IMG/VR virus record: IMGVR_UViG_3300027899_000001 | Location: 248,001 to 312,000 of that record | Reading direction: 5' to 3' (one strand) | Length of the DNA: 64,000 nt | Part shown: piece after piece, positions 26,947-50,317 of the stretch | How the letters are laid out: each line of letters opens with the position of its first letter | How positions within the stretch are numbered: position 1 is the stretch's first letter | Notes under the pieces: model-generated | What the model was told of the DNA's origin: nothing | The model's database searches: none | The model's input: only the letters and a program-made list of their open reading frames with translations | Program-made: the position numbers and the translations under genes

Positions 26947-26957
26947 GAATATATAAA
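26947..26957 (+). promoter_or_regulatory. Putative late promoter motif GAATATATAAA (divergent pair with the variant at ~26918-26930)
   Basis: Exact 11-mer 17 nt upstream of the ATG at 26974. Confidence 0.5.
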
Positions 26958-26973
26958 ATAAAATATTACTACT

Positions 26974-28281
26974 ATGAAACATGTATATGAATCTTTAAAA
27001 GAATTTAATGATTATAAATTCTTCAAACTTTTAGAAGAAAAAGAAGAACCTGGTACTGATAAGCAAAATCTACAATCTAAAGAAAAAGATGGTTTAGCTA
27101 TTATAGATAAGGTCATAAAGAATTTTGATGACTTTAAAAAAGATGCTAAAGGTGAAATTCTTAAGTATAAAGAATTCTGGGAAGAAAATCAGCAAACTAA
27201 AAAGGCATTTTCTAATGGAGATGTCTATAAAATGTATGATGGTAATTACGTTGTAGGTGTTCTTGAATTACCAGTAGAAACATTATCTGATGGTAGTATA
27301 GAAGGTGGATTAGGAGCAACAGATGAACCAGTAGAAGAGATTATTGAAGGCAAAGAATTAATGGAAGCTACAAAAGAAGAAGACGATTTAGGTCTTGATC
27401 TTGGTTTAACAGATGAACCCATAACAGAACCTAATACTAGTCCTGCTCCAAATGAAGTTCCAGCAGATCCTAATACACAAGAATTAGAAGAGCCTGCTCC
27501 TGATCAATCGGGAAATTCAGGATTAACTGATCAATCTCCAGTAGAAGAACCTCCAATGGATCAAGCACCAGTTGAAGAACCTTCGCCAGATCTTACAGCG
27601 CCCCAAACATATTTAGTAGTATATGACATGTCAGGTGATGATAAAGAAGAAATTTTTAGATGTGGTTCTAATAATGTAGTTCAAGGATTTCAAGCATTCT
27701 ATAATGACACTTTTAAAGGATCAATGAAAAATGCTATATTACAATATAAGAAACAAAAAGAACAAGAAAAAGCTGAAGCTGAAAAAACAGAGAAGAAAAA
27801 AGTTCAAGCTGAAAAACAAACTAAAGTTCAAAAATTCTTAGGTGAAGCTCTTGAAGAAGATATGCCAGAAGATGATGAAATGCAGTCTTGGCTTGATGAA
27901 GTAAGAGATTATCTTATATCTGAATATGAAATTGAAGAAGATGTAGTAGATGATTTCTTAGAATTAGCTTCTGAACAATTAGCTGATTTATTTGATGGAG
28001 GATCAAGTGCATTTGATGCAGCTGGAACAGTTGCTACAGATGAAGATATTTTATCAGAACTTGATAAAGATGATGAAGACGAAGATGATATTGACATAGA
28101 AGATGAAGATGAATTAGATGATGAAGATCTTGAGGATCTTGGTGAAGAAGAAGATGAAGAAGAATATCCTGAAGATGAAGATGATGAAGAAGATGATGAC
28201 GATACACATGAAGAAGAATTAGGAAAAATAATTGGAAGAGATACAATGAGACGTCCATTACGTTTATCAGATGAAGATTAA
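26974..28281 (+). CDS. Highly acidic low-complexity protein
   Basis: 435 aa; Pro/Glu-rich middle, D/E-saturated C-terminus; leader MKHVYESLKEF. Confidence 0.7.
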   Translation: MKHVYESLKEFNDYKFFKLLEEKEEPGTDKQNLQSKEKDGLAIIDKVIKNFDDFKKDAKGEILKYKEFWEENQQTKKAFSNGDVYKMYDGNYVVGVLELPVETLSDGSIEGGLGATDEPVEEIIEGKELMEATKEEDDLGLDLGLTDEPITEPNTSPAPNEVPADPNTQELEEPAPDQSGNSGLTDQSPVEEPPMDQAPVEEPSPDLTAPQTYLVVYDMSGDDKEEIFRCGSNNVVQGFQAFYNDTFKGSMKNAILQYKKQKEQEKAEAEKTEKKKVQAEKQTKVQKFLGEALEEDMPEDDEMQSWLDEVRDYLISEYEIEEDVVDDFLELASEQLADLFDGGSSAFDAAGTVATDEDILSELDKDDEDEDDIDIEDEDELDDEDLEDLGEEEDEEEYPEDEDDEEDDDDTHEEELGKIIGRDTMRRPLRLSDED

Positions 28282-28300
28282 TAAAATATAAAATTTAAAA

Positions 28301-28324
28301 CAAAGGGAACTTCGGTTCCCTTTG
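28301..28324 (+). terminator. Rho-independent terminator with a cUUCGg loop
   Basis: CAAAGGGAAC-TTCG-GTTCCCTTTG. Confidence 0.8.
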
Positions 28325-28370
28325 TTATTTAACAAAACTTTAACAAGATATCAGCGTATAATATAAAATA

Positions 28371-28396: not shown

Positions 28397-29203
28397 ATGA
28401 GCAAACACTTTGACGAAATTATCATAATTGGTCTTGAGAGGTGTCAAAACAGAATTGACATGGTTGAATCTCAACTTAAAAATTTTAATCTTCCCTATCG
28501 TATCTTTCCCGCATTTGATGGACAGCAAATAGCAAATCCGTCAATGAAAACAATGACACGTGCTCCTCTTAAAGCATTTTCTAATTTTAATCCCAGTAGA
28601 CCTAAATATCTTCCGGGTATGTTATGTTGTGGGTTATCTCATATAGCAGCAATGAAACATGCTCAGATGATGAATCTTAAAGGAATACTTTTACTTGAAG
28701 ATGATGTCATATTATCTCCTGATTTTGCAGATAGATTAAAATTGATTGAAGAAGTTCCAGACGATGCAGATTTAATTTATATTGGAGCTATTGTGACAAG
28801 CGATCATTTAAGTAAGAAATATAAAATATCTGAACATGTATGGGATGCTCAGAAAATGAGTCTTTACGCAACTCATTCCTTTATAGTCACGCGTAAAGGA
28901 TATACACCAGTTATTAAAAAAATGATGGAATGCGAAGATACATGCGATTCATTATTAGTTGAAGGTGTTCAAAAACAGGAAATTAAAGCATATGCAGTAA
29001 TTCCATTTTGTACATATCAAATAGAAGGAACATCAGAAATTGATGGTAAAAAGAAATCATTAAATCATACAAAAACTTTATATTCTCCGGATGAAAATTT
29101 TAGTAACATGGGAGGCTATGATCGTAAAACTAAAATGAATGTTAATGATATAACAAGTGAATATAGCTACGAAAAAAGTGCAAAACCTAAATCTTTATTC
29201 TAA
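28397..29203 (+). CDS. Glycosyltransferase, GT25-like
   Basis: 'IIGLER...R', 'AFDG', 'LCCGLSH', 'LLLEDD'; ends KPKSLF. Confidence 0.75.
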   Translation: MSKHFDEIIIIGLERCQNRIDMVESQLKNFNLPYRIFPAFDGQQIANPSMKTMTRAPLKAFSNFNPSRPKYLPGMLCCGLSHIAAMKHAQMMNLKGILLLEDDVILSPDFADRLKLIEEVPDDADLIYIGAIVTSDHLSKKYKISEHVWDAQKMSLYATHSFIVTRKGYTPVIKKMMECEDTCDSLLVEGVQKQEIKAYAVIPFCTYQIEGTSEIDGKKKSLNHTKTLYSPDENFSNMGGYDRKTKMNVNDITSEYSYEKSAKPKSLF

Positions 29204-29337: not shown

Positions 29338-29561
29338 ATGCACAAGAATATATCGATTATCTTAAAGATTTTGCTGAAAAAATAGATGATGAAACTCTTA
29401 AATCAGTAGGAATTAAATCTATTGCAATTATACAAGAAGTTCTTGCAAAAGATCCAATGAAACCAAAATTATTGGTAAAAAAATTAGATGAAACACAATA
29501 TAGTGTATATGGTAGAGATGAAATTTTAACAGAATTGAACAGAATATTTAGAGACGTATGA
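29334..29561 (+). CDS. Hypothetical protein
   Basis: 75 aa ORF. Confidence 0.55.
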   Translation: MNAQEYIDYLKDFAEKIDDETLKSVGIKSIAIIQEVLAKDPMKPKLLVKKLDETQYSVYGRDEILTELNRIFRDV

Positions 29562-30802
29562 AAATAGCTTTAGTAATGGGAAGAGGCGCAGAAGGCGCCG
29601 GAATTCAACGATATGTTATTGAATTATCGACATTTTTATCTAAAAAACAAATTGAACATATTATCTATATCATGGATGATAAAAAATGGGGACGTGGAGG
29701 ATTTCAAACATTTCCTCAAAAACCATCTATGATTACAAAAGATAACATTGATAATTTTTCAGATGTATTGAATAAATTTGATTATGTGTTTATCAATAGT
29801 GTTCCAAGTATTAAACATTCAGAATGGGCTATTGATGGATTTCTTAAAATGGTCAAGGGTATAAAAACCAAAAAGATTATATTTCAAAATGATCATAAAA
29901 TAGCTTCTATTCATAGAAATGCTAATTTTATTGAGATGTGTGGTCTTTGTGATGGTATAGTATCTCATAGTATTACATCTCCTTTCTATAATAAACTTGT
30001 AGATGTATATGGAGGCGCTGTTAGATCTAAATTTATTCAACTTCAAGTAGGATTTAATTTCTCTCAGTTAGCAAAATATCGTAAAGAAGATCATGTTAAA
30101 AAAATTACATATCTTGGTAGATATGCTACATTTAAACAACCTGACAGATTATTTGCTTTTCTTCCTTATGCTAAAGATAATGATATATTACTTGAAATGA
30201 AAGGTGTTGAAAGATCACTTGGCGCTTTGAATATCTTTTATGATGATATCGAAAATAAAATTCCCAAACATGATATCATTCAGGTTGATAAAAATTTCTT
30301 TAAAACTGGAATGTCAGCTTTAGATGCTGATAGAAGTTATGAACATGTTTATATATATGGTCCTTATGATTATGTAGATGGAATGGAAACATTAAGCAAA
30401 TCATTAGTAGGCGCAGATTTTTATCATCTTAATGCAGATGCATATGGAGATAATTTTGAATATGCTCAATGTGAAATAATTGGAGTAGGAACAGTTCCTA
30501 TGTTTGATTATCATTGGGCAGAAAATTGTTACATATATGAAAATGGTAAGAAAACTGATAAAAGATTTGTAGAACTTGATACTTATGGACTTTTTGTTAA
30601 AAAAGATTTAACAAATGTAAAGGAAATAGTAGAAAAAATTAACAATATATATTCTGATAAGAAACTTCATAAACAATATTTAGATTGTAGTTTTGAAGTT
30701 ACACGAAATCATTGTGATAGTGAATTTATATTTCAAAATCTTATAGATGGTATTTCAGGATTAGAAAAAGCAAAACAAATAAAAACTAAACCCTTATTTT
30801 AA
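29558..30802 (+). CDS. agt: DNA alpha-glucosyltransferase, T4 AGT-like
   Basis: 'MGRGAEGAGI', 'INSVP', 'NDH...S.HRN', 'SHS', 'GRYATFK', 'GVERS', 'EYAQCE...GTVP.F' parallel T4 AGT as recalled; ends KTKPLF. Confidence 0.8.
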   Translation: MKIALVMGRGAEGAGIQRYVIELSTFLSKKQIEHIIYIMDDKKWGRGGFQTFPQKPSMITKDNIDNFSDVLNKFDYVFINSVPSIKHSEWAIDGFLKMVKGIKTKKIIFQNDHKIASIHRNANFIEMCGLCDGIVSHSITSPFYNKLVDVYGGAVRSKFIQLQVGFNFSQLAKYRKEDHVKKITYLGRYATFKQPDRLFAFLPYAKDNDILLEMKGVERSLGALNIFYDDIENKIPKHDIIQVDKNFFKTGMSALDADRSYEHVYIYGPYDYVDGMETLSKSLVGADFYHLNADAYGDNFEYAQCEIIGVGTVPMFDYHWAENCYIYENGKKTDKRFVELDTYGLFVKKDLTNVKEIVEKINNIYSDKKLHKQYLDCSFEVTRNHCDSEFIFQNLIDGISGLEKAKQIKTKPLF

Positions 30803-30803: not shown

Positions 30804-31730
30804 ATGGCACGACCTAAAAAAGTAAAAGTAGAAGAACCTGCTAAAATAGCAGTAGAAGAAAAAGAAACTCTAAATGATATTATAATTGAAAAAAGTAACA
30901 TTTATCCATTAGGAGAAATACAGATTGTAGATAATCCGGTGTTTGAAGTTCCATATTTGGAATTTAATTATAATAAAGAGTCTGACACCATTTCTCTAGA
31001 AAAACAAAAACAAACAATACAAGTTAGCACTTCTAGAGTAGGCACGCATATAACTTCAGAACAAGCTAAAGAATTTAAAGATAAATTTAATTTAGACTTA
31101 AACGAAGTTGTTAAAAAAGCATTGATAAATGAAGCTTCTCAACAATTAACAAAACATTATATATCAAAAATTGGAGAAGCTGCTACAGAAAATTATATTA
31201 AAGAATATACCCGTTGGGATAAGTTTAAAGTATGGGCATATAAACTTGTTAAAAAACAATATAGAAAAAAAATAAAAATTCAAACTTCTAAAGAGTTAAA
31301 TTATAGAATTTTAAAAGAAGCCAATAATATTGCAGCAAATAGTAGATGGGGAAGTGGAAATTTTGTTATATGTAGTTTAAAAACTGCTATGCTTTTACAG
31401 AGTTCATCTAATTTTGTATATGCTACTTTAAATAAACCTGTATCTACAAATGGCAGTATTTATCCAATTGGAACTATTGCAGGCGTGACTATTTATGTAG
31501 ATCCTTATATGTTATATCAAGATACTAATGTATACATAGGAAGAAGAAATAATACAAATCAGCCTGGCATAAAACTATTTTTTAAAGAATCTTATAGTTA
31601 TATGCAAACGGAAGGTCTTGGTGCTCCAAAGGTTATATTAGAAATGAGATACGCAATCGCAGGCGTTGGTAAAAATTATAAAGACCAATATAGAAAATTT
31701 GAATACATTGATAAAATCATAAACAAATGA
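30804..31730 (+). CDS. Truncated paralog of the major capsid protein
   Basis: 'NGSIYPIGTIAGVTIYVDPYMLYQDTNVYIGR...TEGLGAPKVILEMRYA' aligns with 'NGSLYPLGTIAGMTLYVDPNMLYSDTRVLVGR...TEGTGAPKVIIKTRYA' in 56803-58575. Confidence 0.8.
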   Translation: MARPKKVKVEEPAKIAVEEKETLNDIIIEKSNIYPLGEIQIVDNPVFEVPYLEFNYNKESDTISLEKQKQTIQVSTSRVGTHITSEQAKEFKDKFNLDLNEVVKKALINEASQQLTKHYISKIGEAATENYIKEYTRWDKFKVWAYKLVKKQYRKKIKIQTSKELNYRILKEANNIAANSRWGSGNFVICSLKTAMLLQSSSNFVYATLNKPVSTNGSIYPIGTIAGVTIYVDPYMLYQDTNVYIGRRNNTNQPGIKLFFKESYSYMQTEGLGAPKVILEMRYAIAGVGKNYKDQYRKFEYIDKIINK

Positions 31731-32026
31731 AAAAGAAATTAATAATTTTAGTATGTTATTTAAGTGTAAATGATGAATTATCTTATCAAGAAATTCAAGA
31801 ACATTTATCAGATTTTAAAAGAATTTTAGATGAATCATTTGATAATGAATTACAGGAAAATACAAATACTATAATTAAAAGTATAGTTTTACCTGTACAT
31901 TATCAGCCTACATCTATAGAATGTATTTTCCCAACAGAGCCTGATTTACCAGAAGAAGTAATTGAAAGACTTGAACAAATTGAATTAACACAGAAAAATT
32001 ATGACGAACACAGATCTAAGGATTAA
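31727..32026 (+). CDS. Hypothetical protein
   Basis: 99 aa ORF. Confidence 0.55.
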   Translation: MKKKLIILVCYLSVNDELSYQEIQEHLSDFKRILDESFDNELQENTNTIIKSIVLPVHYQPTSIECIFPTEPDLPEEVIERLEQIELTQKNYDEHRSKD

Positions 32027-32282
32027 ATATAAATTTGACACAGGATTATATCCAACTAAAATGGATTATCGTGGAAACCTAACTCAAGAATATGCTAAAT
32101 GGCTTGAAGAATATGGCGGTGATTATCCACCATTGTATTTAACTACTTGGCAACGTGAGTATTTCAAAAAAGAAACTGGAAATTACGCCACGTTTTATAA
32201 AAAAGGAAGAATACATTATAAACGAGACTATAGATTTTGGTTAGAAGATTTTGTGCGTAAAATATTATCATTAGAACAATAA
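32001..32282 (+). CDS. Hypothetical protein with an internal duplicated Y..WLE motif
   Basis: 93 aa; 'FDTGLY...YAKWLEE' and 'KETGNY...YRFWLED'. Confidence 0.55.
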   Translation: MTNTDLRIKYKFDTGLYPTKMDYRGNLTQEYAKWLEEYGGDYPPLYLTTWQREYFKKETGNYATFYKKGRIHYKRDYRFWLEDFVRKILSLEQ

Positions 32283-32298: not shown

Positions 32299-33018
32299 AT
32301 GAGTTTAATAGACGAACGATATGATAAACGAGTTTGTATTTGTCTTAAAGAAAGAGATGACAAGTATAAATATATGTTGGCACAATTTATTAAAAATAAT
32401 ATAGACGCTGAATTTTATAGGCCTGTAATTCAAGGACATGCACATCATTTTGTAAAACCTTATGCACAAATCTATAACAGAAGGGATATAAATTATGTAA
32501 GATTTAATGAAGAATTTCCTAATGAATTTGGATGTTTCTTAAGTCATTATAATGTTATTAAATCTGCTTTATTAGATGGTGCTGAAAGTATTTTTGTATT
32601 TGAAGATGATTGCGCATTTCATAAAGATTTTACTACATTACTTCCTAAATATTTAGATACTATTCCTGAAGGAACAGATGGAATTTTGCTTTATTCTTTT
32701 ATGTATCAATTTGAACCTCAAAATGTTAGATTAAAACCGAGATGGACAAAAGGATTTGCAAGTTGGTCTTTTTTAGCATATGGATTAAATAGAAGGGCAA
32801 TGGAAGGATATATTAAACTTCAAGATGAAACACCAATGATTGCAGATAGAGGATCTTGGACTATGATGACACAAATGAATTATAATTTTGTTATCGCAAG
32901 CCCTCCGTTAGTAGTTCCTTCAAAAATACTTACATCAAGTATTCGAGGAGAAAATAAAAATTATGAAAAAAACAAGAGTGTATTTTTATTAGGAATAAAT
33001 GAAACAGATTATGAGTAA
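32299..33018 (+). CDS. Glycosyltransferase, GT25-like
   Basis: 'EFGCFLSH', 'FVFEDD'. Confidence 0.7.
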   Translation: MSLIDERYDKRVCICLKERDDKYKYMLAQFIKNNIDAEFYRPVIQGHAHHFVKPYAQIYNRRDINYVRFNEEFPNEFGCFLSHYNVIKSALLDGAESIFVFEDDCAFHKDFTTLLPKYLDTIPEGTDGILLYSFMYQFEPQNVRLKPRWTKGFASWSFLAYGLNRRAMEGYIKLQDETPMIADRGSWTMMTQMNYNFVIASPPLVVPSKILTSSIRGENKNYEKNKSVFLLGINETDYE

Positions 33019-33456: not shown

Positions 33457-33657
33457 ATGACAACATTACTTAAAAGAACACTAAAACCAAACAAATGGAT
33501 TGGTGGTGTTTGTGGCGGTCTCGGCAAATTTTTTGGAGTAGATCCACTTATTTGGAGACTGATTTTTATATTTGGAAGTATGTTTACAATATTTCCGTTT
33601 ATAGTAACTTATGTAGTTATGTGGATTATAGTTCCAAAAGAAACTCCAACCGTTTAA
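33457..33657 (+). CDS. pspC: PspC-domain membrane protein
   Basis: 'KWIGGVCGGLGKFFGVDP..WRL.F....Y..MWI.VP'. Confidence 0.85.
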   Translation: MTTLLKRTLKPNKWIGGVCGGLGKFFGVDPLIWRLIFIFGSMFTIFPFIVTYVVMWIIVPKETPTV

Positions 33658-33669
33658 TACCTTTACTTT

Positions 33670-34449
33670 ATGACATTTGCAACGTATGTAATGACATTCG
33701 ATCAAGAAAAATGGATCATGCGAAATCTTGAGAATGCCTATCCTCATGTAGATAATATCTATGTAATGTATAGTAAATTACCATGGGGATATAATCCACA
33801 AGCAAGAGAAACTTATACAAATTCATTTGATTTGAATATCATTAAAAATTCTCCTTATATGGACAAAATAACCATTATTGAAGGAGATTGGATGAGTGAT
33901 ACTGATCAAAGAAATGCTTGTCTTCAACGTGCTAAAAAAGATGGATATGATTTTTTAATGGTTCATGATGCAGATGAATTTTATTTTCATAATGATTTTG
34001 ATAAAATAATTGATTATGTTCATACATATGAAAATTATGATGTATTTGATATAAATCTTTATGCATTTTGGAAATCATTTAAATATGTTTTAATAGATCC
34101 ATCAAAACCGCATAGAATAGGCGGCACAAATCAAACAGTTGTTAATTTACGCAGAGTTGATAAATATGATTACATTAGAGATACTCATACAAAAAATCGT
34201 GTAACAATTCCTGATATAATATGCTATCACGGATCTTATGTATTAACAAATGAAGAAGTATATAAAAAAATAAAAACTTGGAGTCATAATAATGATTTTA
34301 ACGTAGATGATTGGTATAATAAGGTGTGGCTACCTTGGACTATAGAATCTAAAAATTTACATCCTATTTGGCCTTGGTGTTGGGATCATTGTGAAGTATT
34401 TGAAAATATGTTGCCTGAAGCAATAGAAGATTTTGATTTTGTAAACTAA
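33670..34449 (+). CDS. Glycosyltransferase, GT-A/GT2-like
   Basis: 'QRN..L......D.....DADE' pattern. Confidence 0.65.
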   Translation: MTFATYVMTFDQEKWIMRNLENAYPHVDNIYVMYSKLPWGYNPQARETYTNSFDLNIIKNSPYMDKITIIEGDWMSDTDQRNACLQRAKKDGYDFLMVHDADEFYFHNDFDKIIDYVHTYENYDVFDINLYAFWKSFKYVLIDPSKPHRIGGTNQTVVNLRRVDKYDYIRDTHTKNRVTIPDIICYHGSYVLTNEEVYKKIKTWSHNNDFNVDDWYNKVWLPWTIESKNLHPIWPWCWDHCEVFENMLPEAIEDFDFVN

Positions 34450-34462
34450 AATATAAATAATT

Positions 34463-34651
34463 ATGGCAAAAGAACCCTTTGTAGATGTAATAGAGAAGTC
34501 AACTCTATATTTATCGTTATCAGAAAATCTTTTAATTAAATTAGATCGTTTTTTATGTAATACAAATTTAACAAAAAAAGAACAAGAAAATATAATAAAA
34601 ATTATAGAAGAAATTTATAGTGAAGCATATGTTAATAGTTTAACAGATTAA
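34463..34651 (+). CDS. Hypothetical protein
   Basis: 62 aa ORF. Confidence 0.5.
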   Translation: MAKEPFVDVIEKSTLYLSLSENLLIKLDRFLCNTNLTKKEQENIIKIIEEIYSEAYVNSLTD

Positions 34652-35383
34652 GTGGAAAAGATTAAAGTTTATACATATCACGGATTTGGCGATCAGTGTA
34701 TCTGTTATGGAATTCTTAAAGAATTTGCAAAAAGATATAATGAAGTAAAAGTGTATTCTGATGTAATGAATAAAAATACATTTAATTCAATTACTCGTTT
34801 ATATTCTAGCCTGAAAAATGTAGAATTAATAGATGAAGTCTATAAAGAAGAAATTCACGCTGCTGATCATAAAATAGCTCATACTAAATACTGGTTTGAT
34901 AAAGTTCTTCCATGGTATCAAGATCCATCATTACCTCCACCAGAATGGTTTAAAGATGATTGGTGGTTTGATAGACAATGGTATTTAAATGCTAGTTTGC
35001 CATTTAATTTAAAATGGGATAATTTTTATTTTGAAAGAGATTTAAATAAAGAAAAAGAAGTTTTTTATGATATCTTGGGCTTAAAAGATAATCAAGAATT
35101 TTTATTTTTTCATGAAGATCCTGTAAGAAATTATAATATTAATAAAAAACATCTAAATGCAAATATTAAATGGATAGATTTTTTTAATTATCAAGATATT
35201 AGCATATTAGATATTTTATATACTATTGAACATGCTAAAGAAGTGCATACTTTTAATACAAGTACATTAACATTTATTGATTTAATGAATATTCAGCACC
35301 CTGCTTTATATTATCATATGTATGTAAGACCATCAATATTTGATAGTATAAATTTAAGATTACCTTGGAATTTAATAACATAA
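34652..35383 (+). CDS. Putative GT-B glycosyltransferase, paralog 1 of 3
   Basis: 'HGFGDQ...G', 'WDNFYFERD', 'YTIEHAKEVH'. Confidence 0.55.
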   Translation: MEKIKVYTYHGFGDQCICYGILKEFAKRYNEVKVYSDVMNKNTFNSITRLYSSLKNVELIDEVYKEEIHAADHKIAHTKYWFDKVLPWYQDPSLPPPEWFKDDWWFDRQWYLNASLPFNLKWDNFYFERDLNKEKEVFYDILGLKDNQEFLFFHEDPVRNYNINKKHLNANIKWIDFFNYQDISILDILYTIEHAKEVHTFNTSTLTFIDLMNIQHPALYYHMYVRPSIFDSINLRLPWNLIT

Positions 35384-35386
35384 AAT

Positions 35387-36124
35387 ATGAAAGTATATAC
35401 ACATACGCAATTTGGAGATCATGTTGTAACATTTGGAATTATTAAAGAATATTCAAAACAATATGATGAAGTAATATTAACTATTAGTGATAACGCACAA
35501 GGAACTTTAGTAAGTTCTTCTCATAATGATAATATTAAAAGATTATTTTCAAGTATTCCTAATGTAGTTTTAACAACTGAACGATTTGCAGATAATGAAT
35601 ATGATAAAATTATTAGTAGCGGTTGGTGGTATGAACAAGTTAAGCCATGGTTTGAAAATCAAGATTTACCATATACATTAGGAGATAATATGATAGGAGA
35701 TAGATTTTGGTATATTCTTGGTGGTGTTCCATTTTATTTAAAATGGGATAATTTTTACTTTGAAAGAGATCCCAAAAAAGAAAAAGAAGCATATTATGAT
35801 ATATTTGGATTAAAAGAAAATCAACAATATTTATTTTTACATGAAGATCCAAAAAGAAATAATGGAATATGTATAAATAGGAAGTATGTTAGTGATATGT
35901 ATAGAGTAATTGAATTAGCAAAATATCCTGAAGTAAGCGTGTTAGATATTTTATACACTATTGAAAAAGCTAAAGAAGTGCATATTATTAATACTGGATT
36001 AAGATCTTTTATAGATTTAATGAATATAAATCATAACAATTTAATTTATCATAAATACACAAGACCTAATCCAGTAGAACAAGCAGCAATGAGATTAAAT
36101 TGGAAAGTAATAGATAAATTTTAA
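35387..36124 (+). CDS. Putative GT-B glycosyltransferase, paralog 2 of 3
   Basis: 'QFGDH...G', 'WDNFYFERD', 'YTIEKAKEVH'. Confidence 0.55.
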   Translation: MKVYTHTQFGDHVVTFGIIKEYSKQYDEVILTISDNAQGTLVSSSHNDNIKRLFSSIPNVVLTTERFADNEYDKIISSGWWYEQVKPWFENQDLPYTLGDNMIGDRFWYILGGVPFYLKWDNFYFERDPKKEKEAYYDIFGLKENQQYLFLHEDPKRNNGICINRKYVSDMYRVIELAKYPEVSVLDILYTIEKAKEVHIINTGLRSFIDLMNINHNNLIYHKYTRPNPVEQAAMRLNWKVIDKF

Positions 36125-36126
36125 AT

Positions 36127-36768
36127 ATGGAAGGTAGCAGAACAGATATAATAAATTCTATTTTTGATAATTTTGATTTTGAATCTTATCTTGAAATAGG
36201 AGTGTATTATCCAGAAAATAATTTTAATAAAATTAATGCAAAATTAAAGCATTCAGTTGATAATCTTCTTGGAGCTTCCACTTGGTATACATATTATGTG
36301 GATAGCGATTGTTTTTTTGAAAAACATGTAGGAAATCAAAAATATGATGTTATTTTTATAGATGCATTACATGAAGAACATCAATGCTATAGAGATGTTA
36401 AAAATGCATTAAAACATCTTAATAAAAATGGATTTATTGTAATGCATGATTGTAATCCATTAGAAGAAAAAAATACAATACCATATAAAGATTTTCTTAA
36501 CGGTGTAGATTCTGGAGGAAGATGGAATGGAACAGTTTATCGTGCATATGTACGATTAAAAAATGAATTAAGAGATTATTCATGTTTTACAGTTGATGAA
36601 GATTGTGGAGGATGTGGAATTTTAACACAACAAAAATTATTACCAAATAATCCATTGCCATTTAATGTTGATAATTTTGGTTGGAAAGAATTTGATGAAA
36701 ATCGAAAAAAAACATTACAATTAATTTCTTATGATGAATATCTTCATATACTAAACACTGCGAGATGA
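36127..36768 (+). CDS. Class I SAM methyltransferase (Methyltransf_24-like)
   Basis: 'YLEIGV', 'YDVIFIDALH', 'IVMHD'. Confidence 0.75.
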   Translation: MEGSRTDIINSIFDNFDFESYLEIGVYYPENNFNKINAKLKHSVDNLLGASTWYTYYVDSDCFFEKHVGNQKYDVIFIDALHEEHQCYRDVKNALKHLNKNGFIVMHDCNPLEEKNTIPYKDFLNGVDSGGRWNGTVYRAYVRLKNELRDYSCFTVDEDCGGCGILTQQKLLPNNPLPFNVDNFGWKEFDENRKKTLQLISYDEYLHILNTAR

Positions 36769-37385
36769 ATTATTATAGCCAAACAGGAGAAGATAAAATA
36801 ATAGAAGAATATTTTGAAAAAAATTATATTGGTGGTTGTATAGAAGTTGGCGCAATGGATGGCGTAGGTAATAGCAATACTAATTATTTTGAAAAAAGTG
36901 GATGGTATAGTTTATGTGTTGAACCAAATCCTCATTATTTTAAACAATTAATTAATAATAGATTACATAGCATTAATTACGCTATATCAAATGTTAATGA
37001 TGATTTAATTTTTAATATAGTAGATATTAAAGACTCGTATATTCATCAAGATGCTATAAGTTCTTTAAAAATAGATGATAGACTATTTAATCAACACAAA
37101 GATTTAGGATATAATATGTCAATAATACCTATAATCGTTAAGGCTATAACATTAGACTATTGTATTGAACATTTTTATAAATATGATACACTAGATTTTA
37201 TAAGTATTGATACAGAAGGAACAGAATTAGATGTACTAAAAGGATTTTCTATTGAAAAATGGATTCCTAAATTATTAATAATTGAAAATAATTATAATGA
37301 CCCAGATATAGAAATTTATTTAGATATGTTTGGATATAAAAAAGATAGAAGATTAGCAGTAAATGATTTTTATATTAAAAAATGA
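36765..37385 (+). CDS. FkbM-family methyltransferase
   Basis: 'YYSQ.GED', 'IEVGA.DG...SNT', 'VEPNP', 'IDTEG.E..VL.G'. Confidence 0.85.
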   Translation: MNYYSQTGEDKIIEEYFEKNYIGGCIEVGAMDGVGNSNTNYFEKSGWYSLCVEPNPHYFKQLINNRLHSINYAISNVNDDLIFNIVDIKDSYIHQDAISSLKIDDRLFNQHKDLGYNMSIIPIIVKAITLDYCIEHFYKYDTLDFISIDTEGTELDVLKGFSIEKWIPKLLIIENNYNDPDIEIYLDMFGYKKDRRLAVNDFYIKK

Positions 37386-37828
37386 AATTTATTCAATTAT
37401 CTAACATAGAATTTTTAAAATCTTCTATAGAAAAATTTTTTATAGATAATAAATACGCGTATGCATTTTTTAGTCCGCATGAATATTCTTATGATGCATT
37501 ATTAAAAGAAATAGCTTCTAAACCAAAAGATTATTTTGTATTTTTAATGGATGATAATAATATTGCTGGATATGGTTTACTTAGAGGATGGAGCGAAGGA
37601 TATGATATTCCAAGCTTAGGAATAATGATAGATATTAATTATCAAGGAAAAAAATTATCAGAAACATTGATGAATCACCTACATCAAATTTGTGTTGATA
37701 GAAATGCTAAAAAAATAAGACTAAGAGTTTATAGAAAAAACTATAAAGCAATTTCTCTTTATAATAAATTAGGATATGTATTATCTGATTTTGATGAAAA
37801 TACATTTATAGGATTTAAAACATTATAA
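37382..37828 (+). CDS. GNAT N-acetyltransferase
   Basis: 'YQGKKLSETLM', 'N.KAI.LY.KLG'. Confidence 0.85.
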   Translation: MKFIQLSNIEFLKSSIEKFFIDNKYAYAFFSPHEYSYDALLKEIASKPKDYFVFLMDDNNIAGYGLLRGWSEGYDIPSLGIMIDINYQGKKLSETLMNHLHQICVDRNAKKIRLRVYRKNYKAISLYNKLGYVLSDFDENTFIGFKTL

Positions 37829-37829
37829 T

Positions 37830-38132
37830 ATGGCAGATACAGTAGGATCACTTATAGATAAATTAACTACAGTTGATTTAAAATTATGGAATAGTCAAGA
37901 AATTTTATATGAAATAAGAAGAATGACTTTTGAAGAATATAAAGAAAAATATTTTAAATCAGAAGAAGGTGCAAAAGAAATGTGGGAAATGCTCAAAAAA
38001 ACCACAGATCTTAATTATCAAAGAAGTTCATTGATACATGAAATTGATGAAAAATTAATTGATATGATTAATACAGGATTAAGCGGAGACGATTTTTTAA
38101 AATATACACAAAACCCTCATAAAACTTATTAA
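37830..38132 (+). CDS. Small helical protein, DUF4254-like
   Basis: 'T.GSLIDKL...LKLW...N.QRS.LI.EID'. Confidence 0.55.
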   Translation: MADTVGSLIDKLTTVDLKLWNSQEILYEIRRMTFEEYKEKYFKSEEGAKEMWEMLKKTTDLNYQRSSLIHEIDEKLIDMINTGLSGDDFLKYTQNPHKTY

Positions 38133-38133
38133 A

Positions 38134-39240
38134 ATGATACCATCATACAGACCTTATTTACCAAAGAGAGTTCTAAAATATGCGCATGAAGCTCTTGATT
38201 CAACATGGATTTCATGTTACGGAAAATACATACAAATGGTTGAAGAAAAATTAAGTGAAATTTCTCAATGTAAATATGTATTAACAACCGATCATGGCAC
38301 TTCTGCAGTACATTTGGTTGCAAAGGCTCTTGAGTTTAAATATCCTGAAATTAAAAAACTTATTGTTCCTTCAAATGTTTTTGTAGCAGCTTGGAATATG
38401 TTTATCACTAATCCTATTTATGAATTAATTCCAGTAGAAGCAGATATTAATACGTGGAATATTAATTATGAGTATTTAATAAAAGCTCATAAGGAACATC
38501 CAGATGCTGCATTTTTAGCAGTTCATAATATGGGCAATATCATAAATATTCCCTATATAAAATTTCATTGTCCTAATATGATTATTGTTGAAGATAATTG
38601 TGAAGGGTTTTTAGGTAGTTATGGAAACTATAAAGCGGGTTCACAGGCATTAGCATCTGCTATATCTTTTTTTGGAGGTAAAACTATTACAACAGGAGAA
38701 GGCGGCGCATTTTGCACAAATGATGAAGAAATTGCTAATGAAATTAAAAGAGTAAAATCACAAGGAGTTACATCAAGAAATTTTGTTTTTTCTGGCTTAG
38801 GATATAATTATAGAATGACTAACGTTGAAGCTGGTCTTTTATATGGTCAACTTGAAATATTAGATGAAATACTTGAATTAAAAAATAATGTTTTTAATTT
38901 ATATAAAGAAGAATTGGAAAATGTGGAAGAAATTGAATTTCAAGAATCATCAGAAGTTTGTAAACATTCTCATTGGATGTTTGGAATAAGAATGAAAACT
39001 TTCAATAAAGAAAAAACAGATGCACTAAAATATTTTCTTTATACAGGTAATGTAGAAACAAGACCTATGTTTCCTCCAATGAATTATCATAGTCATTTTA
39101 GTCATTTTCCTGATTTTTCAGTTTCAAAACAATTATTTGAAACTGCCTTTATTCTTCCATCCTTTCCTGATTTAACTAAAAAAGAAATAAAATACATATG
39201 TAAAACGCTTAAAGATTATTTACATAAAAATGGGAATTAA
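38134..39240 (+). CDS. DegT/DnrJ/EryC1/StrS PLP-dependent sugar aminotransferase (perosamine-synthase-like)
   Basis: 'GTSAVHL', 'VEDNCE', 'SFFGGKTITTGEGG', 'GYNYRMTN'. Confidence 0.9.
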   Translation: MIPSYRPYLPKRVLKYAHEALDSTWISCYGKYIQMVEEKLSEISQCKYVLTTDHGTSAVHLVAKALEFKYPEIKKLIVPSNVFVAAWNMFITNPIYELIPVEADINTWNINYEYLIKAHKEHPDAAFLAVHNMGNIINIPYIKFHCPNMIIVEDNCEGFLGSYGNYKAGSQALASAISFFGGKTITTGEGGAFCTNDEEIANEIKRVKSQGVTSRNFVFSGLGYNYRMTNVEAGLLYGQLEILDEILELKNNVFNLYKEELENVEEIEFQESSEVCKHSHWMFGIRMKTFNKEKTDALKYFLYTGNVETRPMFPPMNYHSHFSHFPDFSVSKQLFETAFILPSFPDLTKKEIKYICKTLKDYLHKNGN

Positions 39241-39924
39241 ATGAAAATTTTAATACTTGGTGATGGTAAATTAGCAACAGAACTAATTAAACAAACGGGA
39301 TGGGATTATATTAGTCGTAAAAAAGATGATATAGATTTTACTTATCCATTTACATATTTAGAAAAACTTAGATCATATGATGTTGTTATAAATTGTATAG
39401 GATATACAAAAACATATGAAAATGAAAGAAAAAAGAACTGGAATATTAATTATGTTGGTGTTATTCATTTAATGAATTATTGTAATAGTTTTCATAAAAA
39501 ATTGGTTCAAATTAGTACTGATTATGTTTATGCTAATTCAAATAATTCTCATTCTGAAGATGATATTCCAGTTCATTTTGAAAGTTGGTATACATATACA
39601 AAACTTTTAGCTGATGGATATATTCAAGCAGTAGGAAAGAATTATTTATTATTAAGAACTACATTTAAACCTCGCCCATTTCCATGGAAAAAAGCATGGG
39701 ATGATATAAAAACGAATTCTGATTATGTTGATGTTATTGCAAATTTAATAATAGAATTGATAAAAAAAGAAGCTACTGGAGTTTATAATGTAGGAACTAA
39801 TCCAAAAACATATTTTAAATTAGCTATTAAAACTAATCCCGGCTGTCAACTTGATAATAGTAATGAATTTAATCATCCTAAAAATGTTACTATGAATTTA
39901 GATAAATTACATAACATACTATGA
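39241..39924 (+). CDS. RmlD-like NDP-4-keto-sugar reductase (SDR)
   Basis: 'LILGDGKL', 'VINCIGYT', 'QISTDYV', 'YTYTK', 'LLLRT'. Confidence 0.8.
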   Translation: MKILILGDGKLATELIKQTGWDYISRKKDDIDFTYPFTYLEKLRSYDVVINCIGYTKTYENERKKNWNINYVGVIHLMNYCNSFHKKLVQISTDYVYANSNNSHSEDDIPVHFESWYTYTKLLADGYIQAVGKNYLLLRTTFKPRPFPWKKAWDDIKTNSDYVDVIANLIIELIKKEATGVYNVGTNPKTYFKLAIKTNPGCQLDNSNEFNHPKNVTMNLDKLHNIL

Positions 39925-41234
39925 TAACTACTCCATTTTATGAATTTAAAAATTCTTTAACAACAGAAAATAAATTTCAAAGTCTAATTTCTTTTATGAA
40001 TTCTTATCAATATATAAGAGAGAACAATTATTTTAAGGTTCATGAAATTGATTTAAAAGAAATAAAAAAATGGAATATAAATAATAAAGAAATAGTTCAT
40101 GAATCTGGAAAATTTTTCAAAATTGAGGGAATAAAAGTTCATACAAATTATGGAAATAAACATGATTGGGATCAGCCTATTATCAATCAACATGAAATAG
40201 GAATATTGGGTATAATTACTAAAGTACGTAATGGCGTGCGTTATTTTTTAATGCAACTTAAAATGGAACCAGGCAATATAAATCTTTTACAATTATCTCC
40301 AACTGTGCAGGCAACAAAAAGTAATTTTTTACAAGTTCATAAGGGAAAATCTACATTATATTTAGAGTATTTTGCCGAAAATAAAAAATCAAAAATATTA
40401 ATTGACCAATTACAATCAGAACAAGGTGGAAGATTTCTTAGAAAAAGAAATCGTAATATGATTGTAGAAATATATGATGAATTTGTAATTCCAGAAAATT
40501 TCTTTTGGTTAACATTAGGAGAAATAAAAAACCTTTTGCATTTAGAAAATTTTGTAAACATGGATGCAAGATCTGTGTTGTCTACTATTCCTCTTGATTA
40601 TGATTTTGGCATGCCATTATATGCTGATCAAGAAGTAATACGTTGGTTTATTGATCAAAAAATGAAATATGAATTACAAATAGAAAAGGTATCATTATCA
40701 CAATTAAAAGATTGGCATATAGCTAAAAATAGAATTTATAATTTTTATAGAGCTGATAAGTTTTTTACAGTAATAGGAATAAAAGTTGAAACAAAAAACA
40801 GAGAAATATTTTCTTGGTGCCAGCCTATGTTTAAAGATGAAAACGAAGGATTAATAGGACTTATAATGAAAAAATTTAAAGGCGATAATCATTATTTATT
40901 TCAAGTAAAAGTATTACCAGGTAATATAGATATTATTGATTTATCGCCAACTGTATCATATTCAAATTATAAACAATATATAGGATATGAAGATCAACTT
41001 GAATTTTTTGATAGATTCATATATCCAAAAAATTCACAAATTTTATATGATGTAAAACAGTCAGAAGAAGGGGGAAGATTTTATCATTTACAAACTAGAA
41101 ATATGCTAATTGAGATAGATGATGAAATAGATATTCCTGATAATTATATTTGGCTTAATAAAGATCAAATAAACAAATTTTTACCTTACGGAATGTTTAA
41201 TGTAGAATCAAGAAGTTTAATTTCAATAATATAA
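39921..41234 (+). CDS. NDP-hexose 2,3-dehydratase (EvaA/TylX3/OleV family)
   Basis: Duplicated domain: 'WDQPII.Q.E.GILG...EPGN...QLSPTVQAT.SN...QSEQGGRF..K.NRN' and 'QSEEGGRFY...RN'. Confidence 0.9.
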   Translation: MITTPFYEFKNSLTTENKFQSLISFMNSYQYIRENNYFKVHEIDLKEIKKWNINNKEIVHESGKFFKIEGIKVHTNYGNKHDWDQPIINQHEIGILGIITKVRNGVRYFLMQLKMEPGNINLLQLSPTVQATKSNFLQVHKGKSTLYLEYFAENKKSKILIDQLQSEQGGRFLRKRNRNMIVEIYDEFVIPENFFWLTLGEIKNLLHLENFVNMDARSVLSTIPLDYDFGMPLYADQEVIRWFIDQKMKYELQIEKVSLSQLKDWHIAKNRIYNFYRADKFFTVIGIKVETKNREIFSWCQPMFKDENEGLIGLIMKKFKGDNHYLFQVKVLPGNIDIIDLSPTVSYSNYKQYIGYEDQLEFFDRFIYPKNSQILYDVKQSEEGGRFYHLQTRNMLIEIDDEIDIPDNYIWLNKDQINKFLPYGMFNVESRSLISII

Positions 41235-41246
41235 ATAATATAAATT

Positions 41247-42185
41247 ATGAATGTAGCATTAATTGGAACAGGATATTGGGGTAAAAAATATGTACATACT
41301 TTAATGAGTATAGAAGATATAAATTTATCCTGGGTATGTGCAAAAACTGATACAGAAAAATTTGCACCAACAAATACAAAATTCACTAACAACTATAAAG
41401 ATATTCTGCATGATAAAGATGTAGAATGCATTATAATTGCAACACCACTTGAAACACACTATGAAATAGCAAAAGACTGCCTAATAGCAAGAAAGCATGT
41501 ATTATTAGAAAAACCATTTACAAGAACTTCTGAAGAAGCTTCAAAATTATTTCATATAGCAATAGAAGAAGAACTTATATTAATGCCCGGACATATTTAT
41601 TTACATCATGACGGTATAGTACAATTAAAAAAATTAATAGATAACAAAAAAATAGGTAAAGTTGAATCTTTTTTTTCAAAAAGATTAAGTACAAGTTATA
41701 AATATTTAAATGCGTTATGGGAAGCTGGCGCGCACGATATATACATATTAGATTATTTTTTTGGTGATAAGTATAGTTATGAAATGAAAAATATAATGGG
41801 GGATATTACTCATTGCGTATTTAATTTAGAATATAATAATAAAAATAAATTAAATTCACCATATATTTATAATGATCCTAATTTACATATAATAAATGTG
41901 TATATTGAAGTTTGTAATAAATATCCAAATAAAGTAAGAGAAATAATTATAAATGGGTCTAAAAAACAAGCAATATTTGATGACAAGTCAATAGTTTTAA
42001 TAGATAATATAACTAGAGAAATCGATATTGTACAGTATAATAATACTATATCACCATTAGAAAAACAATGTAGACATTTCTTTGAGTGTATAAGAAATAA
42101 TAATATTAAACCTATATCTAACGCTTTTGATGGATTTAAGAATATACAAGTACTAGAAAGAATTAATAGTTTATTAAATCTTTAA
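41247..42185 (+). CDS. Gfo/Idh/MocA oxidoreductase (probable NDP-sugar 3-ketoreductase)
   Basis: 'IGTGYWG', 'IATP..TH', 'KHVLLEKP'. Confidence 0.85.
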   Translation: MNVALIGTGYWGKKYVHTLMSIEDINLSWVCAKTDTEKFAPTNTKFTNNYKDILHDKDVECIIIATPLETHYEIAKDCLIARKHVLLEKPFTRTSEEASKLFHIAIEEELILMPGHIYLHHDGIVQLKKLIDNKKIGKVESFFSKRLSTSYKYLNALWEAGAHDIYILDYFFGDKYSYEMKNIMGDITHCVFNLEYNNKNKLNSPYIYNDPNLHIINVYIEVCNKYPNKVREIIINGSKKQAIFDDKSIVLIDNITREIDIVQYNNTISPLEKQCRHFFECIRNNNIKPISNAFDGFKNIQVLERINSLLNL

Positions 42186-42197
42186 ATATAAAATAAT

Positions 42198-43837: not shown

Positions 43838-43840
43838 ATT

Positions 43841-44512: not shown

Positions 44513-44517
44513 AATAT

Positions 44518-45234: not shown

Positions 45235-45250
45235 TTTAATAATCTATAAA

Positions 45251-46910: not shown

Positions 46911-46916
46911 TTAAAA

Positions 46917-47696: not shown

Positions 47697-47701
47697 TTTT
47701 A

Positions 47702-47749
47702 ATGAATAAAAAAATAGCGCTTATCACCGGGATAACTGGCCCACATTAA
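47702..47749 (+). pseudogene. Stranded 5' remnant of gmd (MNKKIALITGITGPH*)
   Basis: Hand-translated; aligns with NKKIALVTGING at the start of the intact gmd. Confidence 0.8.
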
Positions 47750-49608: not shown

Positions 49609-49614
49609 AAAAAT

Positions 49615-50316: not shown

Positions 50317-50317
50317 A

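What the first reader, a model, noticed from the sequence alone, without database searches (positions are those of the whole stretch)
30804..31730. Truncated major-capsid paralog inside the glycosylation operon
Seen: 308 aa with clear similarity to the C-terminal half of the MCP (also EQAKEFKDKFNLDLNEVVKKALINEASQQL vs EQIQDLNKQWGIDVIAMVENAGINEISQAI). It lacks the MCP N-terminal half, has a basic MARPKK start, and lies 25 kb away on the opposite strand. Inference: a vertex protein (gp24-like), an adaptor that brings GTs to the capsid lattice, or a decoy for capsid-sensing immunity.
Basis: partly seen in the sequence, partly recalled or inferred. Interest (0 to 1): 0.68.

Follow-up and report, generated by a model that had tools for sequence, protein, structure and literature searches.

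The report
Compact basic capsid paralog beside glycosyltransferases
A 405-kb freshwater phage carries, beside its normal head-shell gene, a small positively charged copy of that gene that still folds as a complete shell protein and is always encoded next to two sugar-adding enzymes; it is most likely a special head-corner protein, but the tie to those enzymes is unexplained.

Summary
Window 30804-31730 (+) is an intact 308-aa ORF of the Gp23 capsid family (Pfam E 1.5e-21). It is 30% identical to residues 310-577 of the 590-aa major capsid protein (MCP, 56803-58575, minus strand), 25 kb away, and sits inside a sugar and glycosyltransferase (GT) gene island.

"Truncated" is wrong. The AlphaFold model (pLDDT 83) is a complete minimal HK97 fold: Z 20.4 to T4 gp23, 18.1 to gp24, 15.3 to HK97 gp5. 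It lacks only the long N-terminus and the roughly 170-aa insertion of the MCP.

It belongs to an apparently undescribed family. About 70 clusters of roughly 300-aa proteins form one clade, and 63 of 70 are basic. All long MCPs and T4 gp24s examined are acidic.

The family arose by duplication inside the huge-phage MCP lineage, independently of T4 gp24.

A cassette is conserved down to about 30% identity: AGT-like GT, capsid paralog, small ORF, GT25.

The best reading is a gp24-like vertex or minor shell protein that evolved convergently and is functionally tied to the GT cassette (confidence about 0.5). A DNA-linked or GT-platform role is not excluded. A decoy role has no support.

The parts
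30804..31730 (+). The finding: a 308-aa compact, basic (pI 9.4) Gp23-family capsid paralog with a complete HK97 fold and no insertion domain.
29558..30802 (+). AGT-like GT-B glycosyltransferase, 414 aa. Its stop codon lies 1 nt before the paralog's ATG. It is the conserved upstream partner.
   Evidence: Pfam AGT E 1.6e-11. phrog_2888 alpha-glucosyltransferase E 3.8e-62 over the full length. 64-71% identical and adjacent in L004, L005, L024-L027 and L084; 27% identical in L087. Absent from five huge-phage genomes that lack the paralog.
31727..32026 (+). orf99, overlapping the paralog's stop by 4 nt. Conserved only in the near clade. Function unknown.
   Evidence: No Pfam or PHROG hit. The Atlas search gave only weak tautomerase-like fold matches.
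32001..32282 (+). orf93, a small aromatic-rich basic protein. Conserved with the paralog across the deep family. Function unknown.
   Evidence: Homologs follow the paralog in L004, L005, L024-L027, L084 and L087. No family or fold hit.
32299..33018 (+). GT25-family glycosyltransferase ('GT25b'), the conserved downstream member of the cassette.
   Evidence: Pfam Glyco_transf_25 E 1.1e-11. 42-74% identical homologs lie downstream of the paralog in every locus with enough sequence.
26974..28281 (+). 435-aa protein with a poly-Asp/Glu tail. It is the first gene of the plus-strand block and is conserved upstream of the cassette.
   Evidence: 46-68% identical homologs in L005, L025, L027, L084. No family hit.
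26947..26962 (+). Perfect copy of the genome-wide promoter-like motif GAATATATAAAATAAA, 12 nt before the ATG at 26974. The next plus-strand copy, at 33439-33454, closes the unit that holds the cassette.
   Evidence: 14 sites in the window against 2.1 expected.
28299..28326 (.). 12-bp GC-containing hairpin between the acidic-protein gene and GT25a. It is a possible attenuator or terminator inside the unit.
28397..29203 (+). GT25-family glycosyltransferase ('GT25a').
33457..56270 (+). Variable sugar island. It holds PspC-like, GT2, FkbM and other methyltransferases, DegT aminotransferase, RmlD-like, NDP-hexose 2,3-dehydratase, GFO/IDH/MocA oxidoreductase, GT10 fucosyltransferase, radical SAM/SPASM, GT25, sugar C-methyltransferase, GDP-mannose 4,6-dehydratase, GT8, GT47-like and FAD oxidoreductase genes, plus a NUMOD3 homing-endonuclease-like gene. 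It separates the paralog from the MCP by 25 kb here, 13 kb in G006 and 7 kb in L005/G007.
56803..58575 (-). Major capsid protein, 590 aa, Gp23 family, acidic (pI 6.4).
58658..61003 (-). Prohead protease (S77, T4 gp21-like N-domain with His and Ser-Ser conserved) fused to a long coiled-coil, scaffold-like C-terminus. 781 aa. It is the only S77 gene in the genome.

Best explanation
The ORF encodes a functional, complete but stripped-down HK97-fold shell protein. It descends from a duplicate of the huge-phage gp23-type major capsid protein. The duplicate lost the long N-terminal region and the ~170-aa insertion domain and became Lys-rich. It belongs to a broad, single-origin and apparently undescribed family found in uncultivated T4-like huge phages. 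Most likely (inferred, not shown) it is built into the head in low copy number as a specialised capsomer. The simplest case is the 11 pentameric vertices, as a convergent analog of T4 gp24, with the 590-aa MCP forming the hexamers. It is made from a promoter-delimited unit together with an AGT-like GT-B transferase (translationally coupled), a small conserved protein and a GT25 transferase. This cassette travels with it across the whole family. Its function is therefore probably tied to glycosylation, either as a glycan-bearing vertex or as the capsid-side partner of these enzymes. Shown: family membership, fold completeness, paralogy and independent origin, family breadth, charge reversal, and cassette conservation. 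Inferred: incorporation into the capsid, vertex position, and any glycosylation.
For: 1. Gp23 family membership and 30% identity to the phage's own MCP.
2. Confident model (pLDDT 83.4, pTM 0.81) with every HK97 element. VIA Z 20.4 to T4 gp23 (254 residues aligned), 18.1 to gp24 1yue (262 aligned, model 13-305 against gp24 9-422), and 15.3 to HK97 gp5 (222 of 254).
3. There are exactly two Gp23-family genes in the complete 405-kb genome. A long MCP plus a short paralog also occur in two other lineages with long enough contigs.
4. Purifying selection is evident: 70 clusters at 50% identity keep a ~312-aa length, and full-length profile matches form one clade.
5. The rate ratio fits a vertex protein. 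Here the MCP is 74% identical between relatives and the paralog 40%. In true T4-like phages gp23 is 68-75% identical where gp24 is 43-56%.
6. The gene sits at the edge of the head module, only 7-13 kb from the MCP and protease in relatives. The distance varies only through the size of the GT island.
7. About 55 copies per virion would fit expression from an enzyme operon rather than from the MCP promoter (inference).
8. The cassette AGT-like, paralog, orf93-like, GT25 is conserved at 27-71% / 30-48% / 34-47% / 42-74% identity in eight lineages. Five huge phages without the paralog also lack the AGT-like gene.
Against: Capsid incorporation and vertex location are untested. There are no proteomics, RNA data or isolate (one search found only one DNA run). 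All 14 close members and 63 of 70 family clusters are basic. Every long MCP (0 of 65 with pI above 8) and every T4-like gp24 examined (pI 4.5-4.8) is acidic. The protein is therefore not a plain gp24 look-alike. Related huge phages (Lak-B5, LR756500, the 89%-complete G001) manage with one Gp23-family gene, so a separate vertex protein is not required by this capsid type. The gene is embedded in and translationally coupled to enzyme genes rather than morphogenesis genes. The AGT-like neighbour belongs to the T4 DNA alpha-glucosyltransferase family. The window also encodes a second thymidylate-synthase homolog, a dNMP-kinase-like protein and a C5 DNA methylase. The cassette may therefore act on DNA, not on the virion. 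The T4-type protease motif I-I-E|K-S at aa 27-31 is not conserved as Glu across the family.
Confidence: 0.5

Rival explanations
1. The HK97-fold protein has been exapted to work off the capsid shell with the GT cassette on DNA. As a basic, DNA-binding partner or platform, it would help the AGT-like transferase and GT25 glycosylate modified pyrimidines in phage DNA, perhaps coupled to condensation or packaging.
For: There is family-wide positive charge, unlike any capsid protein compared. The gene is translationally coupled to a full-length homolog of the T4 DNA alpha-glucosyltransferase family (phrog_2888, E 3.8e-62), with 1-nt stop-to-start spacing conserved. A divergent thymidylate-synthase homolog (phrog_160, E 8e-43), a thymidylate-kinase-like gene and a C5 DNA methylase lie in the same window. 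Published work shows that phage GT clusters related to LPS enzymes hypermodify DNA with mono- to trisaccharides and often sit near structural genes (bioRxiv 10.1101/2023.12.21.572611; PMC13326640). The paralog and the AGT-like gene are present or absent together in the genomes checked.
Against: No HK97-fold protein is known to have such a role. The fold keeps the whole assembly-competent architecture, including the E-loop and N-arm, and its most conserved blocks are those shared with the MCP. A pI around 9 is reached by 16% of this AT-rich genome's proteins. No Tet/JBP oxygenase was detected, though that search was inconclusive.
Confidence: 0.2
2. The protein is an adaptor, or the glycan acceptor itself. 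It docks on or into the capsid lattice and either recruits the neighbouring GTs to the head or carries the glycan they build.
For: The GT, paralog, GT cassette is conserved. The downstream sugar island varies between relatives in the way surface-glycan loci do. From my own knowledge, not checked here, GT genes lie next to the capsid genes they modify in mycobacteriophages and chloroviruses; the literature search only showed such papers exist.
Against: The paralog has no Ser/Thr-rich tail or obvious acceptor segment. The MCP insertion is the Ser/Thr-rich part instead. No interaction was tested. This reading overlaps with the best explanation rather than excluding it.
Confidence: 0.12
3. The protein is a decoy that titrates or pre-empts host immunity proteins sensing the major capsid protein.
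For: It evolves faster than the MCP and resembles the MCP core. Nothing supports this beyond those two points.
Against: The same rate ratio is seen for the ordinary vertex protein gp24. The family is ancient and of single origin, with conserved length and cassette, unlike typical patchy anti-defence genes. Its surface charge is opposite to the MCP's, which makes it a poor mimic. No defence or anti-defence neighbours were found.
Confidence: 0.04
4. The protein forms a separate small encapsulin-like shell of its own.
For: Its size and insertion-free HK97 fold resemble encapsulins (Z 14-15).
Against: It is clearly closer to T4 gp23 and gp24 (Z 18-20) and belongs to Pfam Gp23 by sequence. No cargo-type neighbour was seen. 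The self-assembly prediction gave no answer (not evidence).
Confidence: 0.03
5. The ORF is a decaying remnant, a truncated pseudogene of the MCP.
For: Sequence similarity covers only the C-terminal half of the MCP.
Against: The ORF is intact and the fold is complete and confidently modelled. Seventy diverged clusters keep the same length, and synteny is conserved.
Confidence: 0.01

Closest known systems
T4 gp24 capsid vertex protein (PDB 1YUE; Pfam Gp23 PF07068)
   Same: Both are a second, faster-evolving paralog of a gp23-type MCP in a T4-like head module that has an S77 prohead protease. Both have an HK97 fold (Z 18.1, 262 residues aligned). The rate ratio to the MCP is similar.
   Different: The paralog is not orthologous to gp24. 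T4 gp23 and gp24 form their own clade (100/100), and the short family nests inside the huge-phage MCPs (94/91). It is 308 aa against 427 and has no insertion domain. It is basic (pI 9.4) against acidic (pI 4.5-4.8). It is not adjacent to the MCP and sits in a GT cassette. Pentamer formation is untested.
T4 gp23 and huge-phage major capsid proteins (Lak, LR7565xx, IMG/VR)
   Same: They share the Pfam family. The best structural match is T4 gp23 (7vrt, Z 20.4). The closest sequence relatives are the MCPs of its own clade and of Lak-B5.
   Different: The paralog is half the length. It lacks the N-terminal ~100 aa and the ~170-aa insertion. A neutral ~50-aa A-domain loop is replaced by a Lys-rich segment (aa 134-165, net +8). 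Its charge is opposite.
HK97 gp5 and encapsulin shell proteins (minimal HK97 folds)
   Same: They have the same size class and domain content: N-arm, E-loop, P domain and A domain with no insertion domain (Z 14-15.6).
   Different: There is no detectable sequence relation. The paralog has no Delta-domain or cargo system, and it reached its minimal form secondarily by reduction of a gp23-type protein.
Phage DNA-glycosylating GT gene clusters (bioRxiv 10.1101/2023.12.21.572611; PMC13326640) and, from my own knowledge, virion glycosylation loci of mycobacteriophages and chloroviruses
   Same: GT-A and GT-B enzymes related to LPS enzymes are clustered with sugar-nucleotide genes. The clusters lie near structural genes and near thymidylate-synthase homologs.
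   Different: Text searches of those papers for 'capsid' and 'structural protein' returned no capsid-fold protein described as a conserved cluster member. Neither substrate, DNA or protein, is known here.

Membership tests
Pfam Gp23 / T4-type major capsid protein superfamily | A significant match to the PF07068 profile above the gathering score. | tested here: met
   77.7 bits against a cut-off of 24.4, E 1.5e-21. 76.4 bits in the genome scan.
HK97-fold capsid proteins | The complete fold: N-arm, E-loop hairpin, P domain with a long spine helix, and A domain. | tested here: met
   Model with pLDDT 83.4. Helix 20-31, hairpin 46-57/62-73, helix 99-133. 222 of 254 residues of HK97 gp5 Prohead II aligned at Z 15.3. 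This is a prediction, not an experiment.
T4 gp24-type vertex protein | Orthology with T4 gp24, that is, descent from the gp23/gp24 duplication. | tested here: not met
   In the ML tree, T4-like gp23 and gp24 form a 100/100 clade that excludes the short family. The short family is sister to Lak-B5 plus its own-clade MCPs (94/91). The PDB profile search matches gp23 at E 4e-5 but gp24 only at E 0.2.
T4 gp24-type vertex protein | An insertion domain in the E-loop region, as in gp23 and gp24. | tested here: not met
   The E-loop is a plain hairpin with the tight turn NKESD. The 308 aa align to gp24 9-422 with 262 residues aligned.
T4 gp24-type vertex protein | Forms the pentamers at the 11 non-portal vertices of the head. 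| not testable with these tools
   A pentamer exceeds the size limit of the complex tool. The trimer job gave no answer.
T4 gp24-type vertex protein | Encoded in the head gene cluster beside gene 23. | tested here: not met
   The gene lies 25 kb from the MCP on the other strand. The distance is 13 kb and 7 kb in relatives, always across a GT island. In T4-like phages gp24 follows gp23 within 0.1-1.3 kb.
T4 gp24-type vertex protein | N-terminal processing by the gp21-type prohead protease at (L/I)-x-E. | tested here: inconclusive
   The window protein has I-I-E(29)|K-S, and the genome has an S77 protease with His and Ser kept. The Glu is N, K, Q or D in many family members.
Encapsulin | An HK97-fold shell protein with a cargo or targeting-peptide partner in the operon; a cellular rather than phage head family. 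| tested here: not met
   By sequence it is Gp23 family. Structural matches to encapsulins (Z 14-15) are weaker than to T4 gp23 and gp24. The neighbours are GTs, not cargo enzymes.

The most novel reading that the evidence does not exclude
A capsid-fold protein has been recruited as a fixed component of a glycosylation module (AGT-like GT-B, HK97 paralog, small protein, GT25) in a large group of huge phages. Two forms are possible. It could be a dedicated, positively charged, glycan-bearing vertex that the phage's own enzymes decorate. Or it could be a DNA-binding HK97 protein that works with a DNA glycosyltransferase during genome modification or packaging. Either would be a first case of obligate coupling between an HK97 paralog and glycosyltransferases.
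Probability: 0.3. Interest if true: 0.8.

Novelty: new variant of a known kind. Interest (0 to 1): 0.6.

Why it matters
Dedicated penton paralogs are known essentially only from the T4 gp23/gp24 pair. In the solved jumbo-phage heads I read about (PhiKZ and Goslar), the MCP itself builds the pentons. This family shows that a gp23-type MCP was duplicated a second time, independently, and reduced to the bare HK97 core. That makes it a natural experiment on what a shell subunit can do without. The family is large (about 70 clusters at 50% identity) and I found no description of it. Its invariable linkage to two glycosyltransferases is a comparative-genomic signal that links head proteins with phage-encoded glycosylation. 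Phage-encoded glycosylation is poorly understood in huge phages, whether it acts on the virion or on DNA. The finding offers a concrete handle on which of the two a 28-kb sugar island serves.

Tried and rejected
- **Self-assembly prediction:** Complex prediction on three copies of aa 20-308 with MSA A3 scored 0.00 and gave no answer. It counts neither for nor against.
- **MCP model:** the AlphaFold2 model of the 590-aa MCP, meant to delimit its insertion domain, failed (pLDDT 45, pTM 0.26). The domain deletion is therefore inferred from alignments only.
- **PDB sequence search:** the family profile found nothing at E 0.01. With MCP rows added it reached T4 gp23 at E 4e-5.
- **Word-index search:** it found only 12 full-length relatives, which first suggested a narrow clade. 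The exhaustive HMM search overturned this.
- **IMG/VR scans for distant members:** alignments A5 and A6 were too diverse to seed a search. Single-protein scans with P0023, P0072 and P0031 gave one known contig or nothing. Co-occurrence with a long MCP is therefore shown in only three lineages.
- **T4 late-promoter core:** TATAAATA is not enriched in this AT-rich window (28 found, 28.5 expected).
- **Longer promoter-like motif:** it is real. Its temporal class could not be settled, because motif-bearing genes include a tail fibre, many homing endonucleases, an ATPase and unknowns.
- **Sequencing runs:** only one DNA run (freshwater metagenome, probably the source) holds the locus and there is no RNA run.
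- **ESM Atlas:** searches of orf99 and orf93 gave no usable lead.
- **Tet/JBP search:** the genome search was empty and uninformative.
- **Protease-cleavage motif:** it was considered and downgraded, because the Glu is not conserved.
- **Pseudogene, encapsulin and decoy readings:** considered and rejected or ranked low, as set out under the rivals.

Full report
**Where the window comes from.** The window is bases 248001-312000 of a complete 405,016-bp virus record with direct terminal repeats. Its GC content is about 27-29%. The only public run holding the locus is a freshwater metagenome. The head genes are T4-like. They comprise a 590-aa Gp23-family MCP (56803-58575, minus strand) and an S77 prohead protease fused to a long scaffold-like tail (58658-61003, minus strand). 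The closest MCPs in GenBank phages are those of the Lak megaphages and the LR7565xx huge phages.

**The observation.** ORF 30804-31730 (+) is intact and encodes 308 aa. It matches Pfam Gp23 at E 1.5e-21 and PHROG 138 'major head protein' at E 1e-17. It aligns with residues 310-577 of the phage's own MCP at 30% identity, E 5e-37. The profile-profile comparison gives E 5e-47. The MCP lies 25 kb away on the other strand. These are the only two Gp23-family genes in the genome. The surrounding plus-strand block is a sugar and glycosyltransferase island.

**The protein is not truncated.** An AlphaFold2 model built on 18 sequences is confident (pLDDT 83.4, pTM 0.81). Only residues 1-20 are disordered. 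It contains an N-arm helix (20-31), a long beta-hairpin (46-57/62-73) in the E-loop position, a 35-residue spine helix (99-133), and the A and P domains.

Structural alignment gives these matches:
- T4 gp23: Z 20.4, 254 residues aligned, model 30-304 against gp23 105-521.
- T4 gp24: Z 18.1, 262 residues aligned, model 13-305 against gp24 9-422.
- HK97 gp5: Z 15.3, with 222 of its 254 residues aligned.

The protein is therefore a complete minimal HK97 fold. Relative to the MCP it lacks the first ~100 residues and the ~170-residue insertion (MCP ~134-305). Paralog 35-60 aligns with MCP 108-133, the conserved '...YLDY' strand, but only weakly (hhalign E 0.016). A neutral ~50-aa A-domain loop of the MCP is replaced by a short Lys-rich segment. 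An attempt to model the MCP itself failed.

**A large, single-origin family.** The word-index search found 12 full-length relatives of 303-333 aa at 35-48% identity. The exhaustive profile search found 610 Gp23-family hits. Among the best 150, 70 clusters at 50% identity and 270-360 aa (median 312) match over nearly the whole profile. They form one all-short clade with the window protein (SH-like support 96). Seven other short hits are MCP fragments.

None of 50,697 GenBank phage records showed a second, short hit. Lak-B5, LR756500 and an 89%-complete 270-kb IMG/VR relative each have a single Gp23-family gene. I found no paper describing the family.

**Independent origin from T4 gp24.** In a maximum-likelihood tree (LG+C20, 43 sequences), T4-like gp23 and gp24 form a 100/100 clade. 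The short family (100/100) nests within the huge-phage MCPs, sister to Lak-B5 plus the window clade's MCPs (94/91). The paralog is therefore a second, independent duplication of a gp23-type MCP.

**Evolutionary rate.** Between the window phage and relative L005, the MCP is 74% identical, the paralog 40%, and the AGT-like enzyme 70%. This ratio matches real vertex proteins. In five T4-like phages, gp23 is 58-75% identical to T4 while gp24 is 33-56% identical. Fast evolution therefore does not argue for an arms-race role.

**Charge.** All 14 close members have pI 8.35-9.51, and 63 of 70 family clusters have pI above 8. None of 65 long MCPs has pI above 8. All six T4-like gp24s have pI 4.5-4.8. 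Basic proteins are common in this AT-rich genome, where 16% are as basic as the paralog. Even so, the consistent reversal relative to every shell protein compared is unexplained by a simple gp24 analogy.

**The conserved cassette.** In the window, the AGT-like gene ends 1 nt before the paralog's ATG and orf99 overlaps its stop. The order AGT-like, paralog, (orf99), orf93, GT25 recurs in L004, L005/L027, L024, L025 and L026.

It also recurs in far more distant members:
- **L084:** paralog 35% identical, AGT-like 64%, again with a 1-nt junction; an FtsH-like gene is inserted before the orf93 and GT25 homologs.
- **L087:** paralog 30% identical, AGT-like 27%, with orf93 and GT25 homologs directly downstream.
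- **The P0027 contig:** paralog, two small ORFs, then GT25.

Five huge-phage genomes without the paralog also lack the AGT-like gene. The rest of the sugar island is variable. It puts 25, 13 or 7 kb between the paralog and the MCP in three lineages.

A strong promoter-like motif, GAATATATAAAATAAA, occurs 14 times in the window against 2.1 expected. Genome-wide, its core is found in 64 of 188 upstream regions. Plus-strand copies at 26947 and 33439 bracket the unit that holds the cassette. The temporal class of the motif could not be fixed.

**What the cassette acts on is open.** The AGT-like protein is a full-length member of the T4 alpha-glucosyltransferase PHROG (E 3.8e-62). The window also encodes a second thymidylate-synthase homolog, a thymidylate-kinase-like protein and a C5 DNA methylase. 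Recent work shows that phage GT clusters hypermodify DNA with glycans. The alternative is a virion-glycan locus: the variable, LPS-like island with deoxy- and amino-sugar enzymes lies next to the head genes.

**Interpretation.** The most economical reading is a low-copy shell subunit, most simply the penton, that evolved convergently with gp24 and is tied to the GT cassette (confidence about 0.5). A DNA-linked or GT-platform role is the main rival (about 0.2-0.3 in total). It is favoured by the charge and by coupling to the AGT-like gene. Decoy, encapsulin-like and pseudogene readings have little or no support.

The I-I-E|K-S motif at residues 27-31 resembles T4 protease sites, and the MCP has L-N-E|A-A like T4 gp23. 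The Glu is not conserved across the family, however.

**Limits.** All functional statements are inferences from sequence, a predicted structure and gene context. There is no isolate, proteome or transcriptome. The self-assembly prediction returned no answer.

Noticed in passing
L004:6539-7030, L005:13496-13957, L025:12481-12924, L026:3757-4248 (no counterpart in the window or its genome): Relatives encode a 147-163-aa paralog of the N-terminal S77 prohead-protease domain a few genes downstream of the capsid paralog. It is 29-38% identical to aa 19-177 of the window's protease. T4 gp21 His85 is replaced by Tyr or Pro, and the Ser140 position by Ala or Arg, so it is probably catalytically dead. 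Both the MCP and the protease were therefore duplicated into this region. The window phage has lost the protease copy.
   Followed up: partly
Genome-wide. In the window at 5335, 8239, 15072, 18259, 19929, 26947, 33439, 56735 and 62886, among others: A strong promoter-like motif, tttttt.aTGAATATATAAAATAAAaa, usually lies 14-40 nt before the ATG. Its ATATATAA core occurs in 64 of 188 upstream regions, 15 times background. It precedes a 1751-aa collagen-like tail fibre, many homing endonucleases, the gene after the MCP and, as a variant, the prohead protease.
   Followed up: partly
window 11683-12384 (-), 13566-14180 (-), 15811-17022 (-): The window holds a second, divergent thymidylate-synthase homolog (Pfam E 3e-13; phrog_160 E 8e-43; the canonical ThyA lies elsewhere at G000 42043-43092). 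It also holds a thymidylate-kinase-like protein and a C5 cytosine DNA methylase. Together with the AGT-like transferase, this suggests that the phage DNA carries a modified, possibly glycosylated, pyrimidine.
   Followed up: partly
window 26974-28281 (+): A conserved 435-aa protein has an extreme Asp/Glu-rich C-terminal third and heads the transcription unit that holds the cassette. Homologs precede the cassette in L005, L025, L027 and L084. It has no family hit. It might pair with the basic paralog, but that is pure speculation.
   Followed up: no
window 9287-9934 (-), 11011-11676 (-), 19947-20966 (+), 47805-48566 (+), and many sites elsewhere in the genome: There are numerous homing-endonuclease genes (HNH, NUMOD3 and phrog_655/3339 types), several with their own copy of the promoter-like motif. 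One sits inside the sugar island.
   Followed up: no
window 20924-22099 (-), 23813-24517 (-), 43037-43837 (+): The window encodes a lysine-2,3-aminomutase-like radical SAM enzyme, a SET-domain protein and a radical SAM/SPASM protein. The first two are conserved next to the cassette in relative L005.
   Followed up: no
window 56803-58575 (-), MCP residues ~60-305 and ~383-430: The MCP-specific N-terminal and insertion segments, which the paralog lacks, are strikingly rich in Ser, Thr, Gly, Ala and Asn. They would be the more obvious O-glycosylation targets if the island serves the virion. The MCP could not be modelled (pLDDT 45).
   Followed up: no
G000:C1:10592-27163 (+), outside the window: There is a single ORF of about 5,523 aa preceded by a variant of the promoter-like motif. 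It was not examined.
   Followed up: no
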